From Blepharisma stoltei ATCC 30299 (Eukaryota > Protista > Ciliophora): DNA of 64,000 nt. The position numbers and the translations under genes were made by a program. Location of the stretch: NCBI GenBank assembly GCA_965603825.1, contig CBFDEM010000057.1, forward strand, positions 794,818 to 858,817. The letters run 5' to 3'. The notes under the pieces are model-generated. The model made no database searches and was not told the DNA's origin. It worked only from the letters and a program-made list of their open reading frames with translations. Positions 2,986 through 64,000 of the stretch are shown here, in pieces (within the stretch, counting starts at the first letter, position 1; every line of letters starts with the position of its first letter).

Positions 2986-3975
2986 ATGGTCTGTTATAAA
3001 GGAAACGGAGTAAAGGTCAAGCTCAAACTTATCAATCCCTTGCTCTTTATAGACAATAGTGATTTTTTCCTAGCATTTTCCAGTTTTTCCAATCCTTCTC
3101 TACTTGCGAAGCAGCTTAGCAATAAAAAGAAGTTCATCATTTCACGCTCAGAGTCTGGCTACAATATTGTGCAGAACCGTATTGTTTTGATTAATTTAGA
3201 TAAAAGCCCACAAGAGGCTTTTTATGAAGTCTTCCAAATCATTGTAAATGCAGAGCCTTCCCAAGAAGGAAATAAGAAAATTAAAAGAATTCTTTTGGCT
3301 TTTCCTGAAAATCCAGACCTATGACTATATGCAATAGAAGAAGTAATAAAAGCCCTGTTGAACAGTTCTGGCATAAGAGTATCACTGACTATATGCTTGA
3401 AAAGCCAAGAATTAGAGATAATAAAAAGTCATTTGAGGGATTCCAATTTTCATACTGAATTAAATGTGAATAACGTAAAAAGGCTTAGAAGATACTTTTT
3501 TTCAAGATTTATCTGTCAATCTTGCTCAGAGTTCGCTTATAAACCTTACGTTTCAAGATGCTGCTACTCAATTTATTGCAATTCATGTGTCAAAAATTTA
3601 TATTGCAAGGTGTGCAATAATCGATGTGAATTTGAAATTAATTTAGCAATAAAAAAATTAGTCAATGAATCACCTTATTATTGTAACTGTGGAGAATCGA
3701 TAAAAGTAAAAGACATTGAAAATCATATGCTAAGTTGTGCAGCAAGCTTATTTCGCTGCAAATTTATAGGCTGCTCTTTTGAAGGCTCCCAAATAGAGCT
3801 TATGGATCACGTTTTTCAATTTCACACAGAAACAATACTAGAAAGAATGAATGAATATGCAGAAATTGATATAAGCCAGAAGCAGCGGCTTATCCAATGC
3901 AGAATGTGTGGAGATTTTAGCGAATCTCAATGCAAAAATTGTTTAAAAAGCCTTCCAATAGCTAAAAAATTATAA
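2986..3975 (+). CDS. RING plus SIAH/TRAF-type zinc finger protein with a possible degenerate macro-like N-terminal domain
   Basis: Two track ORFs join in frame through TGA 3322-3324; CQSC..CC..YCNSC..CKVC RING-like motif, then C-C..H..C and CKFIGCSFEG..LMDH...H fingers. Confidence 0.75.
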
Positions 3976-4001: not shown

Positions 4002-7000
4002 TTAGAATTTATTGAGATCTGCAATGATTTTTCCAATCTCGCTTGTTTTTTCATGGCTTTCTCCCAGTGTAGATTTAAATATAGAAAACGCTTTTTCTAA
4101 ATAAATCAAAGCAATTTGTTTATTTTTGATATTTGCAAGGCCCATGTAATGATAACAAACCCCAGCCGCTTCACTATTTTTTCCTGATTTTCCTTTAATT
4201 ATTTTTAATGACTCTTTTAGGTGTTTCATAGCATCATTATCCGAGCCAAGTTTTAATTGGCAGTACCCGAAGTCACACAAAAACTGGGCTTTGGCCAGCT
4301 CATCTTTTTCATTTTCACAATAGTGGATTTCGTCAGCACTTTCATATTCTAATATAGCTTCATTTCACATAGACGCTCCTAAATAAAACCCAGCTAGCTT
4401 GTTATAAGCTTTTCCCACTTCTAGACTTCTGTCGCCGAATTTTATTTTTCTTATTTCTAGGACTTGCCCCATGCATTTTTTGAATCCGTCAGATTTGCCA
4501 ATTTTCGAGTAATTTTCAGCTGCCTTGACTAAAAATTCAGTCTCATCTTCGTCAAAGCCTTCTTTAGTGATTTCAAAGCAGTCTAAGTAGCATTGTATAG
4601 CTTCTTTATATTTCTGCATGCTTTCTGCAAATTCAGCTGTTTTGATTAGTAATTCTAATGTCTCTTCGTTATTATGTTCTATGTTGTTTTTCGCTGCTTC
4701 TACCTGTTTAAGGCGAAATTCCAAAGCCTTTTGTGGGTTATTCAGTTCACGGCAGATTCTAAATGCAGCATAAGCCCATTGAGCAACATCTGATGTCAAG
4801 TGCTTTGGCTGATCTAATAAATAATTCAAAGCTCTTTCATATAACTCAAGGGCTTCTTCTGGCTGATTTTGGTTTTGTGCAAGCTTAGCTAGAGATGCAT
4901 AAGACTTGCAGCACTCATAATGAGAAGTAGGGACAATTTTTTGCCTTATTTCTAATGCTTTTTCTAGGTATTCAGTAGCTTCTGGGATCTGACTATCAGC
5001 TAGATGTAATAGTCCTATTCTTTCACAGGTGTGTGCACAAAACAAATGGTCTTCTCCAACAGTTGTTTTTATGATCCTTTCTGCATCTAGTGCATATTTC
5101 ATTGCTTTTGGCTTATTTGTGCAGCATTTTGACAGGAAATATAAAATTTTAGCTATTTTTAGGTCATCTAGGCCATATCTTTGGACCCTGATTTCTAATG
5201 CACATTTTAAGTGATTTAGGGCTTCTTCACTTCTTTTACAAGCAATATAAAAATTTGCAATTAAAATATGATAATCACTCAAAATATCATGATGTGTCCC
5301 TACAATTTTACAAATCGGCTCCAAAAGGTTTTCTGAATAATCCACAAGCCCAGATAGCTCTTCTGACATCGGAGGAGGCTGAGATATTAAGCTAGAAATA
5401 TATGCCAAATAATGGCAGCATTTTTTGTAGAGCTCTAAAAATGAAAATCCCAAAGCGATTTTTATAAGAATGATTAAGGTAACAATCACATTTTCAGGGG
5501 CTGAAACTTGGTCTTCTATTATAGGCTCATATGGTCTTAAAATTTCATGAAAATCTTGATTGAGGACTCCGATTTCTATAATTGACTGTGAAATAGAAAA
5601 TATAGCATCTGGAGAAGTTAGCCCAAGGATTTCTTTGGATTTTAATATTTTTTCCAGCTCATTAAACTTGCCTAACTCACTGAGCGTGCTACAAATTCCT
5701 ACCTTTGAGTACAGCAATAAATCTTTGTTTTTACATTCCTGAATAATTTTTGTAAATAAATCCGAAGCTTCACGAGTCTTATGGAGCTTTAAATTGCAAT
5801 AGGCTTCCCCATAATAAGCTTGATATCTATCCGGATGGTTATATTTTGTCAAAATTTCAATAGAATGATTAAAGCTCTGTGCAGCCTCAGAAAAATTCAG
5901 CTCCACCTTCATTTCATACCTTCCTTTTTCATAAAAAACAATCCCAGCTTCTAATGAGCTTTCTCCTATAATGTATTTTGATAATTTTTTTATATGCAAA
6001 GACGCTTTTCCTGTTATGCAAAATGTCGATAAAATATCTAAATCCCCAATTTCTTGTGTAAAAATCTGCTGCAGTGCCAAAGTCAATTGCTGGGTTTGAT
6101 GAGTTTGCGAGACTATAATTTTTGCTATAAACGGATGGATTTTTATTCTGTGTTTTTCATCTTTTATTATAATTCCTAACTTATTGAGGGTATAAGTAAA
6201 AACTTCGTATTTAGAAGCGTCTGATATTTTGGTTATATGGAAAAATACTTTCAAAGCAATGTCTTGGGAAATCCCTGATACGTCAATAAATGTGAGGCAG
6301 GATAAGAAATTTAGGAAATATGGGTGGTCTTTGGAAAGGCGATTTGCGGTACATTTTCAAACTGTTGCAGCTGATAACTCGAGTGGGGAAAAGCCTTGGA
6401 ATTCAATTTTTTTTAGGGATTGTTTGCATTCAGAATGCAAATCTTTGTATTCTTCAGGGGAGATTTTATAGTAATTGATATATCTTCCTATTAGTTCTAA
6501 GGAAATAGGCATGCCTTCGGCTATTCTTAAAATTGAATCATTAAATAATTCTGTGTATTTGCTTAAAATTAAAGCACAGGTTTCAGATAGGATTGGTTTA
6601 ACTTCGATTATGTTTTCCCATTCAGGAAGCGAGGATGTGACTATAATGTGTCCTTTATTTGGTAAAAAATTCCTAATAGACTCTAAGTTTTCAGCATCGT
6701 CGAATATTAATAATGCAGGCTTGCTTTGGTTGTCTAAGTATTCTTTTATTGAATAAATATTGTCATCAAAAGTGTCTCTGATATGCAGCTCAATTTTTCT
6801 AAATAATTTCAAAAATACAAAAGAAATGTTATTGGCGGATTGTGAAGGAATAAATAAAATAGCAGAATAAAGATCATTGTAAACTTGTGAATATTTAACA
6901 GCTAAAGCAGTTTTTCCTATCCCTGAGTCTCCAACTAAAGCAATTATTTTGTTTTGGGCTGATCCAAAACTATTTCTAATTAGTTGCACTTCTGAATCTC

Positions 7001-8456
7001 TCCCGATACCTGAATATTGGATATAAGGATGAATGATTGGCTTTTCTTCGTCTTCTTCTTCGTCCTCATCTTCTTCACTAATTCTTTTATGATACGTTTT
7101 CAAGCATTCTCTATAAAAATCTGAAAACTCAAACATTTTTTTTACATTTGGATGACTTTCTTGTAAAGCCCTTTGACTGAGAATTAAATCAATTTCTTCA
7201 TCAAATTTGTGGGTTTGCTCTTTGATTTTAATCAAAGTTTCTATTGTTTTAGCTCGAATTCTCCAGTCGTCAATTACATCTGGATCTCTGAAATTACTGA
7301 GTTTATTTAATTGTTCTAGAAGATCAGGATTTTGGGTATGCAAAATTAAAATTTCCACTGTATCTAATATAGCAACAATTTGTTCCCAGGTAGATTTCAT
7401 GCTTTTTGTGATAAATTTAATTAAAAGCTCAATTGAAGCATTTGTGGTCGCTTTTGGCTGCTCCATGTATGCTAAAACTATTAAATCGCTCAATAAGCTA
7501 CGCCCTTTTTTGACAGAGTCTTCAATATAAAGCTTGGCTGTTCCTATGCTAACATTGGGGGTTTCATTTAGCAATTCATTGACCATAAGTTGGATATATA
7601 CAGATAAATGAGGTAATAGAGGGACTCCACTGCTAATTTGGGTGACAATTTGGTCAATTGAATTTATGTAAACTGCAAAAGTGGTTTCTGGGTATGTGCT
7701 TTCGCAGATTCTTAAGAGATCTTTTATTTTAGTCACATAGTCTTGAAGAGGCATTTGATGTTCTTCTTTAAATGAAGGAATTAATTTAGAGACGACCATA
7801 TAAGCTCCTAAATATCGCCTTGCTTGTTTTGCTAGTCTCTCCCTAAAAATTTCCCATTTTTTTCATTTATAAATGACTTTTTTAGTCAAGAGCTCCAAAA
7901 ATCTTGCCCCAATTTCATAGAGTTTTACAGTCCCTGGGAGTCCAATGCTTTCGATTTTTTCAATTATTTCCCCTTCAATGGACCCTTCTTTAAACGAATT
8001 AAAAACCTCATCAATATAGCCAAGAATTTTTTCTTCTTGTCTTTCGTCATGCTTAAATGAGATTGCGGGCGATCCAGGGTCTTCTTCAACTTTTGCTTCT
8101 TCTTTTATGTCTTCAGTAGTCGGAGTGTTGTCAAAAGGCTTAATAATTGAACTACTCGGCCTACGGTCTGTTGGTGGAACTATTGAAGCTGATGCCTTTC
8201 GAGGTTTTTGACCATTGCTTGTGGCACAGTTTCCTCCTCCGCATAAGCCACTTTTACCAATGACTATTACATTGTTGGCTTTATAAAATGTTATATTTCA
8301 TTTATTAAGTGTTTTTGTTTGTGGGTTGTCAATGTGGATTTTGGCGTTTGGAGATATAAGGACTCCTTCTTTAGTAAAAACTTTAGAAGCATGCTCGGGT
8401 TTATCTTTATTGAATTCTATAAGGAAGCCTTCTCGTGTTTCAATATAATCTCCCAT
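4002..8456 (-). CDS. NLR-like STAND (NB-ARC-type) NTPase with C-terminal TPR array, 1484 aa
   Basis: Single frame from ATG 8456 to TAA 4002 with in-frame TGAs; Walker A GDSGIGKT (6909-6932), Walker B LLIFDDA, GMPISL (GLPL-like), IHPF (MHD-like), multiple kinesin-light-chain-like TPRs. Confidence 0.85.
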
Positions 8457-8529: not shown

Positions 8530-8829
8530 TTAGCTGCGATTTGTATTTGATAGTGAACGAAAATACGCCCTACGGACATCAATTAGCTGCTGAGTCTTCT
8601 CATCAGCTTTTGGAGGTCCTGCTAAATTTCGACTTATTCGCTGAGATTTAGGACCATGCTTCATAATAAATTTTGGCTTGAAAGTAGGTGTCATCAGCTC
8701 TTCTCTTTTTTCTATAACTCCAATTAGCTGTGATAAATTTAAGCTTCCTATTTTGATATTTTCTTTTGATGGCAGCATTTGGACACGAACTCTTGGAACT
8801 TGACTTGATTTGCTTTTCAAAATTTCCAT
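8530..8829 (-). CDS. Hypothetical protein, 99 aa
   Basis: ATG-TAA ORF with coding-like GC between AT-rich flanks. Confidence 0.6.
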   Translation of the reverse strand: MEILKSKSSQVPRVRVQMLPSKENIKIGSLNLSQLIGVIEKREELMTPTFKPKFIMKHGPKSQRISRNLAGPPKADEKTQQLIDVRRAYFRSLSNTNRS

Positions 8830-60961: not shown

Positions 60962-61454
60962 TTATACATTTCTAAAAGATTGGAACAACTATTTTTGATT
61001 TTATCAAGGAAATAAGCCATTAAACATCAAGAATTGATGTAAATTTCTTTCAGTCAATAATAGTCCCTATTTATTAATGTCCATTGAAAATAATAAATGT
61101 ATTGCCAAATTCAATACTTTCTTTAAATTTGTTTCATCCAAAAAACTAATAGCAATAAAATTATATCGGTTAATGCTGTAAATAATCCTATAAGTAATTG
61201 CTATCAATGTGATTTCTTCACATTTCATGTATAGATCCCTACAATTATATTTTGCAGCACAGGAAGTACTTGGATATCTGTATTTTCTAATTGGGAATTT
61301 TGAGAACTTTATTTTATAGCTGAAATGCCATGGTATTGGCGATACTTAATTAGTTCGCTTCATCTGCTAAAATTAATTTTCCTTTGACTCTAATTGTTTA
61401 TAGGAATTTTCCATTCAGCTTGCTATTTTTGACTAATCTTTTATAAAACATCTA

Positions 61455-64000
61455 AGGGTGTTAGGGTGTTAGGGTGTTAGGGTGTTAGGGTGTTAGGGTG
61501 TTAGGGTGTTAGGGTGTTAGGGTGTTAGGGTGTTAGGGTGTTAGGGTGTTAGGGTGTTAGGGTGTTAGGGTGTTAGGGTGTTAGGGTGTTAGGGTGTTAG
61601 GGTGTTAGGGTGTTAGGGTGTTAGGGTGTTAGGGTGTTAGGGTGTTAGGGTGTTAGGGTGTTAGGGTGTTAGGGTGTTAGGGTGTTAGGGTGTTAGGGTG
61701 TTAGGGTGTTAGGGTGTTAGGGTGTTAGGGTGTTAGGGTGTTAGGGTGTTAGGGTGTTAGGGTGTTAGGGTGTTAGGGTGTTAGGGTGTTAGGGTGTTAG
61801 GGTGTTAGGGTGTTAGGGTGTTAGGGTGTTAGGGTGTTAGGGTGTTAGGGTGTTAGGGTGTTAGGGTGTTAGGGTGTTAGGGTGTTAGGGTGTTAGGGTG
61901 TTAGGGTGTTAGGGTGTTAGGGTGTTAGGGTGTTAGGGTGTTAGGGTGTTAGGGTGTTAGGGTGTTAGGGTGTTAGGGTGTTAGGGTGTTAGGGTGTTAG
62001 GGTGTTAGGGTGTTAGGGTGTTAGGGTGTTAGGGTGTTAGGGTGTTAGGGTGTTAGGGTGTTAGGGTGTTAGGGTGTTAGGGTGTTAGGGTGTTAGGGTG
62101 TTAGGGTGTTAGGGTGTTAGGGTGTTAGGGTGTTAGGGTGTTAGGGTGTTAGGGTGTTAGGGTGTTAGGGTGTTAGGGTGTTAGGGTGTTAGGGTGTTAG
62201 GGTGTTAGGGTGTTAGGGTGTTAGGGTGTTAGGGTGTTAGGGTGTTAGGGTGGTGTTAGGGTGTTAGGGTGTTAGGGTGTTAGGGTGTTAGGGTGTTAGG
62301 GTGTTAGGGTGTTAGGGTGTTAGGGTGTTAGGGTGTTAGGGTGTTAGGGTGTTAGGGTGTTAGGGTGTTAGGGTGTTAGGGTGTTAGGGTGTTAGGGTGT
62401 TAGGGTGTTAGGGTGTTAGGGTGTTAGGGTGTTAGGGTGTTAGGGTGTTAGGGTGTTAGGGTGTTAGGGTGTTAGGGTGTTAGGGTGTTAGGGTGTTAGG
62501 GTGTTAGGGTGTTAGGGTGTTAGGGTGTTAGGGTGTTAGGGTGTTAGGGTGTTAGGGTGTTAGGGTGTTAGGGTGTTAGGGTGTTAGGGTGTTAGGGTGT
62601 TAGGGTGTTAGGGTGTTAGGGTGTTAGGGTGTTAGGGTGTTAGGGTGTTAGGGTGTTAGGGTGTTAGGGTGTTAGGGTGTTAGGGTGTTAGGGTGTTAGG
62701 GTGTTAGGGTGTTAGGGTGTTAGGGTGTTAGGGTGTTAGGGTGTTAGGGTGTTAGGGTGTTAGGGTGTTAGGGTGTTAGGGTGTTAGGGTGTTAGGGTGT
62801 TAGGGTGTTAGGGTGTTAGGGTGTTAGGGTGTTAGGGTGTTAGGGTGTTAGGGTGTTAGGGTGTTAGGGTGTTAGGGTGTTAGGGTGTTAGGGTGTTAGG
62901 GTGTTAGGGTGTTAGGGTGTTAGGGTGTTAGGGTGTTAGGGTGTTAGGGGTGTTAGGGTGTTAGGGTGTTAGGGTGTTAGGGTGTTAGGGTGTTAGGGTG
63001 TTAGGGTGTTAGGGTGTTAGGGTGTTAGGGTGTTAGGGTGTTAGGGTGTTAGGGTGTTAGGGTGTTAGGGTGTTAGGGTGTTAGGGTGTTAGGGTGTTAG
63101 GGTGTTAGGGTGTTAGGGTGTTAGGGTGTTAGGGTGTTTAGGGTGTTAGGGTGTTAGGGTGTTAGGGTGTTAGGGTGTTAGGGTGTTAGGGTGTTAGGGT
63201 GTTAGGGTGTTAGGGTGTTAGGGTGTTAGGGTGTTAGGGTGTTAGGGTGTTAGGGTGTTAGGGTGTTAGGGTGTTAGGGTGTTAGGGTGTTAGGGTGTTA
63301 GGGTGTTAGGGTGTTAGGGTGTTAGGGTGTTAGGGTGTTAGGGTGTTAGGGTGTTAGGGTGTTAGGGTGTTAGGGTGTTAGGGTGTTAGGGTGTTAGGGT
63401 GTTAGGGTGTTAGGGTGTTAGGGTGTTAGGGTGTTAGGGTGTTAGGGTGTTAGGGTGTTAGGGTGTTAGGGTGTTAGGGTGTTAGGGTGTTAGGGTGTTA
63501 GGGTGTTAGGGTGTTAGGGTGTTAGGGTGTTAGGGTGTTAGGGTGTTAGGGTGTTAGGGTGTTAGGGTGTTAGGGTGTTAGGGTGTTAGGGTGTTAGGGT
63601 GTTAGGGTGTTAGGGTGTTAGGGTGTTAGGGTGTTAGGGTGTTAGGGTGTTAGGGTGTTAGGGTGTTAGGGTGTTAGGGTGTTAGGGTGTTAGGGTGTTA
63701 GGGTGTTAGGGTGTTAGGGTGTTAGGGTGTTAGGGTGTTAGGGTGTTAGGGTGTTAGGGTGTTAGGGTGTTAGGGTGTTAGGGTGTTAGGGTGTTAGGGT
63801 GTTAGGGTGTTAGGGTGTTAGGGTGTTAGGGTGTTAGGGTGTTAGGGTGTTAGGGTGTTAGGGTGTTAGGGTGTTAGGGTGTTAGGGTGTTAGGGTGTTA
63901 GGGTGTTAGGGTGTTAGGGTGTTAGGGTGTTAGGGTGTTAGGGTGTTAGGGTGTTAGGGTGTTAGGGTGTTAGGGTGTTAGGGTGTTAGGGTGTTAGGGT
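61455..64000 (+). repeat. Telomeric repeat array (TTAGGGTG)n = (CCCTAACA)n, ~2.55 kb, runs to window end
   Basis: Near-perfect 8-mer tandem array with the G-rich strand running 5'->3' toward the end. Confidence 0.98.

What the first reader, a model, noticed from the sequence alone, without database searches (positions are those of the whole stretch)
8217..8456. Ubiquitin-sized leader ending LCGG followed by a cryptic myristoylation motif on an NLR-like protein
Seen: with UGA=Trp the protein starts at 8456; residues 71-74 are LCGG and are directly followed by GNCATS and a disordered linker. Established: ubiquitin is 76 aa and ends LRGG, DUB/ULP proteases cut after GG, and N-myristoyltransferase needs an exposed N-terminal Gly (other proteins here start MGCCTS, MGGCLS, MGNAVS, MGSCST). 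Inference: a degenerate Ubl pro-domain is cleaved to expose G-N-C-A-T-S for myristoylation/palmitoylation, giving protease-gated membrane targeting of a STAND receptor. From memory, ciliate NACHT-WD40 proteins often carry a similar LRGGGC motif, which would make this a general, little-described module. The segment is invisible in the ORF track.
Basis: partly seen in the sequence, partly recalled or inferred. Interest (0 to 1): 0.8.

Follow-up and report, generated by a model that had tools for sequence, protein, structure and literature searches.

The report
Symbiont-type cleavable cap on ciliate receptor
A conserved ciliate signalling protein starts with a small cap that is not ubiquitin but resembles the cap on proteins that amoeba-dwelling bacteria deploy against their hosts; it ends in a ubiquitin-like cutting signal whose removal would expose a hidden membrane anchor, though cutting has not been shown.

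Summary
Observation confirmed. With UGA=Trp a 1484-aa STAND NTPase-TPR protein starts at 8456 and reads LCGG|GNCATS at residues 71-80. The motif is conserved: GLxGG|G is invariant, and Cys at +3 is kept in 8 of 9 homologues down to 24% identity, including Stentor. It matches instead an uncharacterised prodomain of Amoebophilaceae/Cardinium effectors (hhalign 93-94%, P about 1e-7; P 1e-4 with the selecting motif removed), probably the published APD1/APD2. That domain has 51 matches in one Amoebophilus genome, and in 21 checked copies its GLxGG is followed by Met (17) or Gly (4), like a released native N-terminus. Best reading (0.55): a protease cuts after LxGG and exposes Gly75/Cys77 for myristoylation and palmitoylation. 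Cleavage, lipidation, the protease and any immune role are untested. The scan noted this gene, and ubiquitin-type caps elsewhere in this genome, before; the APD link was not among its notes, and I found no paper on it.

The parts
4002..8456 (-). Whole coding sequence, 1484 aa, prodomain - linker - helical domain - STAND NTPase - TPR
   Evidence: orthologue L056
8235..8456 (-). Prodomain, aa 1-74: six predicted beta strands, no helix; related to the Amoebophilaceae effector prodomain
8235..8249 (-). G-L-C-G-G (aa 70-74), ubiquitin-tail-like putative cleavage signal on a flexible tail after the last strand
   Evidence: invariant GLxGG in 9 ciliate-type and 12 bacterial domains; low pLDDT from residue 72
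8217..8234 (-). G-N-C-A-T-S (aa 75-80), cryptic N-myristoylation (Gly75) and S-palmitoylation (Cys77) peptide
   Evidence: Gly invariant; 9 of 10 homologous peptides fit the Prosite-type myristoylation pattern and carry Cys at +3; inference only
8298..8300 (-). TGA read as Trp53, the codon that hides the leader from a standard ORF track
   Evidence: aligns with TGG-Trp in the orthologue
8061..8216 (-). Poorly conserved basic then acidic linker, aa 81-132
7092..8060 (-). Family-specific domain without Pfam match, weak HEAT/ARM-like resemblance, aa 133-455
6057..7010 (-). STAND NTPase region with Walker A (6909-6932), Walker B (6696-6713) and a GxP motif; sensor-1 Arg absent
4005..6056 (-). TPR array (TPR_12, TPR_10; weak NPHP3-type and kinesin-light-chain-type matches)

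Best explanation
Residues 1-74 are a small all-beta prodomain, related to the prodomain of Amoebophilaceae/Cardinium effector proteins, that presents a ubiquitin-like L-x-G-G tail on a non-ubiquitin fold. A protease acting in trans (most likely a DUB/ULP-type diglycine protease, identity unknown) cuts after Gly74. The new N-terminus G-N-C-A-T-S is N-myristoylated on Gly75 and probably S-palmitoylated on Cys77, which, with the basic residues that follow, anchors the STAND-TPR protein to a membrane. Shown: sequence, conservation, predicted fold, profile similarity to the bacterial domain. Inferred: cleavage (about 0.7), lipidation given cleavage (about 0.8), the class of protease, whether cleavage is regulated or constitutive, and the cellular role.
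For: Motif invariant over 24-53% identical homologues with leaders of 64-74 aa. Fold: six strands, no helix, tail unstructured; bacterial domain gives the same six strands plus a two-helix insert at pLDDT 85. Profile-profile match 93-94%, P 1e-7 to 3e-7 end to end; P 1.1e-4 after removing the 11 residues used to select the bacterial set, 0 of 200 column shuffles reach the score. Bacterial domain has 51 matches in Amoebophilus sp. 36-38, lies behind a signal peptide and lipobox and ahead of varied cargo, among them NB-ARC-TPR. After its GLxGG comes Met in 17 and Gly in 4 of 21 profile-confirmed copies, as expected if the cargo is released with a start-like N-terminus. The same genome holds a true 76-aa ubiquitin-like cap followed by LKGG|GCANSK, the same design on another cap. 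Precedent for cleavage-exposed acylation sites: AvrPphB, ORF4, NopT (PMC2708883).
Against: No experiment shows cleavage or lipidation. Most DUBs read the ubiquitin fold as well as its tail (own knowledge), and this fold is different. One homologue (P0010, GNSSPK) has lost the Cys and breaks the myristoylation pattern. The pattern is permissive. The ciliate model has modest confidence (pLDDT about 75, pTM 0.50, 13 sequences). The bacterial set was chosen by the C-terminal motif; the motif-free match covers only 23-40 columns and would not stand out in a database-wide search, and the bacterial profile did not ring in this genome. The 21 bacterial copies are paralogues, 13 from one genome.
Confidence: 0.55

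Rival explanations
1. No cleavage: GLxGGG is a conserved structural or binding tail of the beta domain, and Cys77 is at most palmitoylated within the intact protein.
For: Glycine-rich ends are often structural; no protease is identified; the motif follows directly on the last strand.
Against: The tail is predicted unstructured in both families; the residue after GG is Met or Gly in bacteria and always Gly in ciliates, hard to explain without a new N-terminus.
Confidence: 0.22
2. The cap is cleaved, but not to allow myristoylation: the cut releases the cargo or tunes its stability, or falls one glycine later and exposes Asn76.
For: Bacterial cargo mostly begins with Met, which is no myristoylation site by itself; three glycines in a row leave the register open; P0010 lacks the acylation pattern.
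Against: Ciliate copies keep Gly, Cys at +3 and a small residue at +5; bacterial GG|M copies fix the register after the second Gly.
Confidence: 0.14
3. The leader cleaves itself, as Hint, SEA or Nup98-type domains do.
For: A dedicated fold always sits right before the site, in bacteria and ciliates; a few bacterial copies have Cys or Ser after GG.
Against: No conserved polar catalytic residue in either alignment; the residue after GG is usually Gly or Met, not a nucleophile; no match to known autoproteolytic folds.
Confidence: 0.06
4. One reading: the leader is a degenerate ubiquitin-like (beta-grasp) domain.
For: Length 74 aa and an LxGG end; real ubiquitin-like caps of this design exist in the genome.
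Against: No helix predicted; no beta-grasp among fold-search rows; no Pfam ubiquitin match; hhalign to this genome's ubiquitin-like domains under 0.5%.
Confidence: 0.03

Closest known systems
Amoebophilus prodomains APD1/APD2 (Zhang et al. 2012, PMC3482391)
   Same: Conserved domain behind a signal peptide and lipobox, ahead of variable effector domains including STAND NTPases; the bacterial family found here fits this description and matches the ciliate leader by profile.
   Different: Described as Amoebophilus-specific and as an anchoring or clustering domain; the section read mentions no GG end, cleavage or eukaryotic member. The ciliate version lacks signal peptide, lipobox and the helical insert. 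The paper's alignment was not available, so APD1 versus APD2 is not settled.
AvrPphB / ORF4 / NopT effectors (PMC2708883)
   Same: Removal of an N-terminal prodomain exposes an embedded Gly and Cys for myristoylation and palmitoylation and gives membrane targeting.
   Different: They are self-cleaving cysteine proteases with other cleavage motifs (GDK); the ciliate protein has no protease domain and is a resident eukaryotic STAND protein.
Ubiquitin and Ubl fusion precursors (polyubiquitin, UBA52, RPS27A, FAU; own knowledge)
   Same: N-terminal cap ending LxGG, cargo follows directly.
Post-proteolytic myristoylation of BID and of aphthovirus VP4 after leader removal (own knowledge)
   Same: Cryptic Gly exposed by a protease.
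   Different: Different proteases and motifs; no diglycine-ended prodomain.
NB-ARC-TPR STAND proteins of bacteria and fungi; NPHP3 (myristoylated NTPase-TPR protein of cilia; own knowledge)
   Same: Helical N-terminal part, STAND-type NTPase, TPR array; weak TPR_NPHP3 match below cut-off.
   Different: Found as a single copy here and syntenic among relatives, unlike expanded NLR repertoires; NPHP3 is myristoylated at Gly2 without a cap.

Membership tests
Ubiquitin-like (beta-grasp) domain | Beta-grasp fold with a central alpha helix | tested here: not met
   AlphaFold2 gives six strands and no helix; no beta-grasp in PDB or Atlas fold searches
Ubiquitin-like (beta-grasp) domain | Profile similarity to ubiquitin families | tested here: not met
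   No Pfam match for 13 leaders; absent from PF00240 hits in the genome; hhalign under 0.5%
Ubiquitin-like (beta-grasp) domain | C-terminal LxGG on an exposed tail | tested here: met
Amoebophilaceae effector prodomain (APD1/APD2-like) | Profile similarity over the whole domain | tested here: met
   hhalign 93-94%, P 1e-7; motif-free control P 1e-4, 0/200 shuffles; weak enough that a genome-wide scan missed it
Amoebophilaceae effector prodomain (APD1/APD2-like) | Same order of secondary structure | tested here: met
   Six strands in both; bacterial two-helix insert absent in the ciliate. The two models were not superposed.
Amoebophilaceae effector prodomain (APD1/APD2-like) | Preceded by signal peptide and lipobox | tested here: not met
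   The ciliate domain starts at Met1; bacterial members have the lipobox
Amoebophilaceae effector prodomain (APD1/APD2-like) | Identity of the bacterial family with the published APD1 or APD2 alignment | not testable with these tools
   Supplement held only as an index
STAND NTPase (NB-ARC-like) | Walker A GxxGxGKT and Walker B hhhhD | tested here: met
   Invariant in 10 homologues
STAND NTPase (NB-ARC-like) | Sensor-1 Arg, GxP motif and winged helix | tested here: inconclusive
   GxP present, sensor-1 Arg replaced here and in most relatives; NB-ARC score under cut-off
STAND NTPase (NB-ARC-like) | C-terminal repeat sensor | tested here: met
   TPR_12 E 1e-28
NLR immune receptor | Ligand-triggered oligomerisation and defence output | not testable with these tools
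   No known effector domain at the N-terminus; single copy
Post-proteolytically myristoylated proteins | Embedded Gly with NMT-compatible residues | tested here: met
   9 of 10 peptides fit the pattern
Post-proteolytically myristoylated proteins | Demonstrated cleavage and myristate incorporation | not testable with these tools
   Needs experiment

The most novel reading that the evidence does not exclude
A small beta domain of unrecorded fold is a general, portable 'cut after LxGG' tag shared by intracellular Bacteroidota and heterotrich ciliates: endosymbionts use it so that a diglycine protease releases dozens of surface-tethered effectors with start-like N-termini, and ciliates have adopted it to gate lipid anchoring of a STAND protein, possibly as a sensor of such protease activity.
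Probability: 0.25. Interest if true: 0.85.

Novelty: new variant of a known kind. Interest (0 to 1): 0.64.

Why it matters
It would give a testable function (proteolytic release after LxGG) to a prodomain found on dozens of Amoebophilus/Cardinium-type effectors, so far proposed to be an anchor, and extend it to eukaryotes. It would show a diglycine processing signal on a non-ubiquitin fold and a route to conditional membrane targeting of a STAND protein in ciliates, whose STAND proteins are hardly studied. Myristoylation predictors that look only at Met-Gly starts miss such proteins.

Tried and rejected
Paralogue searches in the own genome with leader, NTPase and leader profile: single copy (first-look limits apply). 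Motif patterns in the own genome: no enrichment over controls; only L100 is a real cap. Word searches with the leader found only itself; Atlas by features, NCBIfam, Pfam and PDB sequence searches were blank. Metagenome scans gave noise only; one hit came from a human-gut metagenome assembly, was not taken for human DNA, was not examined beyond a blanket profile scan and gave no match. Viral scans could not be run; plasmids blank. Fold searches of both models gave no match (best Z 3.8 and 3.6). An NTPase tree was too poorly resolved to give a donor or direction, so gene transfer from endosymbionts is a guess. A 15-nt GT..AG stretch lies over the motif but is rejected as an intron: the putative RNA contig is unspliced there and the residues are conserved. 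P0016 and P0128 have GG-ended leaders that did not score against the profiles and are not counted as members; P0141 fits only by its motif. The protein was searched in pieces by reference until the database's own full-length record (P0003) was returned. Ten paper searches found no description of this module.

Full report
Source and gene. The window ends in telomeric repeats and reads best with UGA as Trp; its assembly has 41.46 Mb in 64 contigs. From my own knowledge this fits the macronuclear genome of Blepharisma stoltei. The minus-strand frame 8456..4002 encodes 1484 aa, identical in length and start to a protein held by NCBI/UniRef (P0003). Its four TGA codons all face Trp codons in a syntenic orthologue from another UGA=Trp species (L056). 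The architecture is leader (1-74), linker, a family-specific domain (133-455), a STAND-type NTPase with intact Walker A and B, and TPR repeats.

Observation. LCGG at 71-74 and GNCATS at 75-80 are as described. No Met lies between residues 1 and 220. A run guessed to be RNA covers 5600-8424 without gaps and breaks before the upstream gene; another organism's contig spans the region at about 92% identity without indels. The leader is under purifying selection: synonymous sites are saturated against the orthologue while 40% of leader residues and 76% of residues 64-80 are kept.

Conservation. The large search returned full-length homologues at 24-31% identity. They lie on gene-dense eukaryotic contigs with shared neighbours, and one further relative is Stentor coeruleus OMJ87656.1; I take the unnamed ones for heterotrich ciliates by inference. 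All have a 64-74 aa leader ending G-L-x-G-G followed by Gly; Cys follows two residues later in 8 of 9. This is the most conserved block of the first 330 residues, and LxGG occurs nowhere else in 10,388 residues of these proteins. Nine of ten post-GG peptides fit the Prosite-type myristoylation pattern; P0010 is the exception.

The leader is not ubiquitin. AlphaFold2 on 13 leaders gives six beta strands, no helix, pLDDT about 75, and an unstructured tail from residue 72. Foldseek, VIA-align and Atlas searches return no beta-grasp protein and nothing significant. Pfam's ubiquitin model lists 150 places in this genome but not this one, and profile comparison with the genome's own ubiquitin-like domains gives under 0.5% probability.

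What it resembles. I recalled a similar ending in Amoebophilus proteins and tested the lead with a pattern scan of GTDB genomes: 11 of 31 loci carry one domain family, 9 of them from Amoebophilaceae, Cardinium or Cytophagales. Its profile matches the ciliate leader end to end (probability 93-94%, P 1e-7 to 3e-7). Because the set was selected on the C-terminal motif, I removed that motif: the N-terminal strands still align in register at P 1.1e-4, and none of 200 column shuffles reaches the score (24.6 against a maximum of 13.4). The bacterial domain folds at pLDDT 85 into six strands in the same order with a two-helix insert and has no PDB match. It has 51 matches in Amoebophilus sp. 36-38 and 15 in another genome, sits behind a signal peptide and lipobox, and precedes ankyrin, Sel1 or NB-ARC-TPR cargo; L115 thus has the same overall plan as the ciliate protein. 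This fits the description of APD1/APD2 in PMC3482391, where the domains are called lineage-specific and are proposed to anchor or cluster effectors. I could not see that paper's alignment. The similarity is weak in absolute terms: the bacterial profile did not ring in this genome.

Evidence for cleavage. In 21 profile-confirmed bacterial copies with the full GxxGLxGG pattern the next residue is Met in 17 and Gly in 4; a further genome shows Met, Ser and Gly three times each. These copies are paralogues and not independent, but the pattern is what ubiquitin-type fusions show, and it fixes the register after the second glycine. In ciliates that position is always Gly with a nearby Cys. The same genome also encodes a true 76-aa ubiquitin-like cap followed by LKGG|GCANSK (L100), so the design exists there on two unrelated caps. 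Neither alignment has a conserved catalytic residue, which argues for a protease in trans.

Mechanism and confidence. Most likely (0.55) a diglycine protease removes the prodomain, N-myristoyltransferase modifies Gly75, Cys77 is palmitoylated, and the STAND-TPR protein is anchored to a membrane, in the manner shown for AvrPphB, ORF4 and NopT after self-cleavage (PMC2708883). Rivals: no cleavage (0.22), cleavage without myristoylation (0.14), self-cleavage (0.06), degenerate ubiquitin (0.03). Whether cleavage is regulated is unknown. The gene was found once in this genome and is syntenic among relatives, which fits a conserved signalling or ciliary role as well as immunity. The NTPase tree is unresolved and gives no direction of transfer.

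Novelty. Cleavage-exposed myristoylation and the bacterial prodomain are each known. Not found in ten paper searches: the LxGG end of this prodomain as a processing signal, its presence in eukaryotes, and its coupling to a cryptic acylation site. The library lacks most subscription journals. Earlier scan notes mention this gene as NLR-like and ubiquitin-type caps elsewhere in the genome, none the prodomain link. Verdict: real feature, new variant of a known kind, interest 0.64.

Noticed in passing
L100:1285-1530 (G000:C60, about 562000-562250, +): True 76-aa ubiquitin-like domain (Pfam E 5e-13) ending LKGG and followed by GCANSK, a strong myristoylation-type peptide, on a protein of more than 570 aa; may be one of the caps noted earlier by the scan.
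   Followed up: partly
G001, G004, G006 (Amoebophilaceae-type genomes): The effector prodomain's GLxGG is followed almost only by Met, Gly or Ser, suggesting release of cargo with a start-like, stable N-terminus.
   Followed up: partly
L127:144-1339: A MAG labelled Myxococcota has two copies of the prodomain, each followed by GG|C and a Cys-rich peptide; L101 (labelled Clostridia) has one too and may be a mis-binned contig.
   Followed up: no
P0016 residues 50-141; P0128 residues 1-77: Bacterial-type NB-ARC-TPR proteins with other GG-ended leaders (VKGLGG|T, LKLMGG|GSKGSK) that do not score against either profile; possibly more distant members.
   Followed up: partly
window 2986-3975 (+) and 8559-8828 (-): Both neighbours, a Sina-type zinc-finger gene tail to tail and a 90-aa gene upstream, are conserved in the same order around the orthologue L056.
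   Followed up: partly
L012-L017 (G000 C16, C27, C43): Three loci each with two NB-ARC-like matches about 3 kb apart, a STAND family separate from this gene.
   Followed up: no
window 61360-64000: About 2.6 kb of 8-bp telomeric repeat; the window lies at a chromosome end.
   Followed up: no
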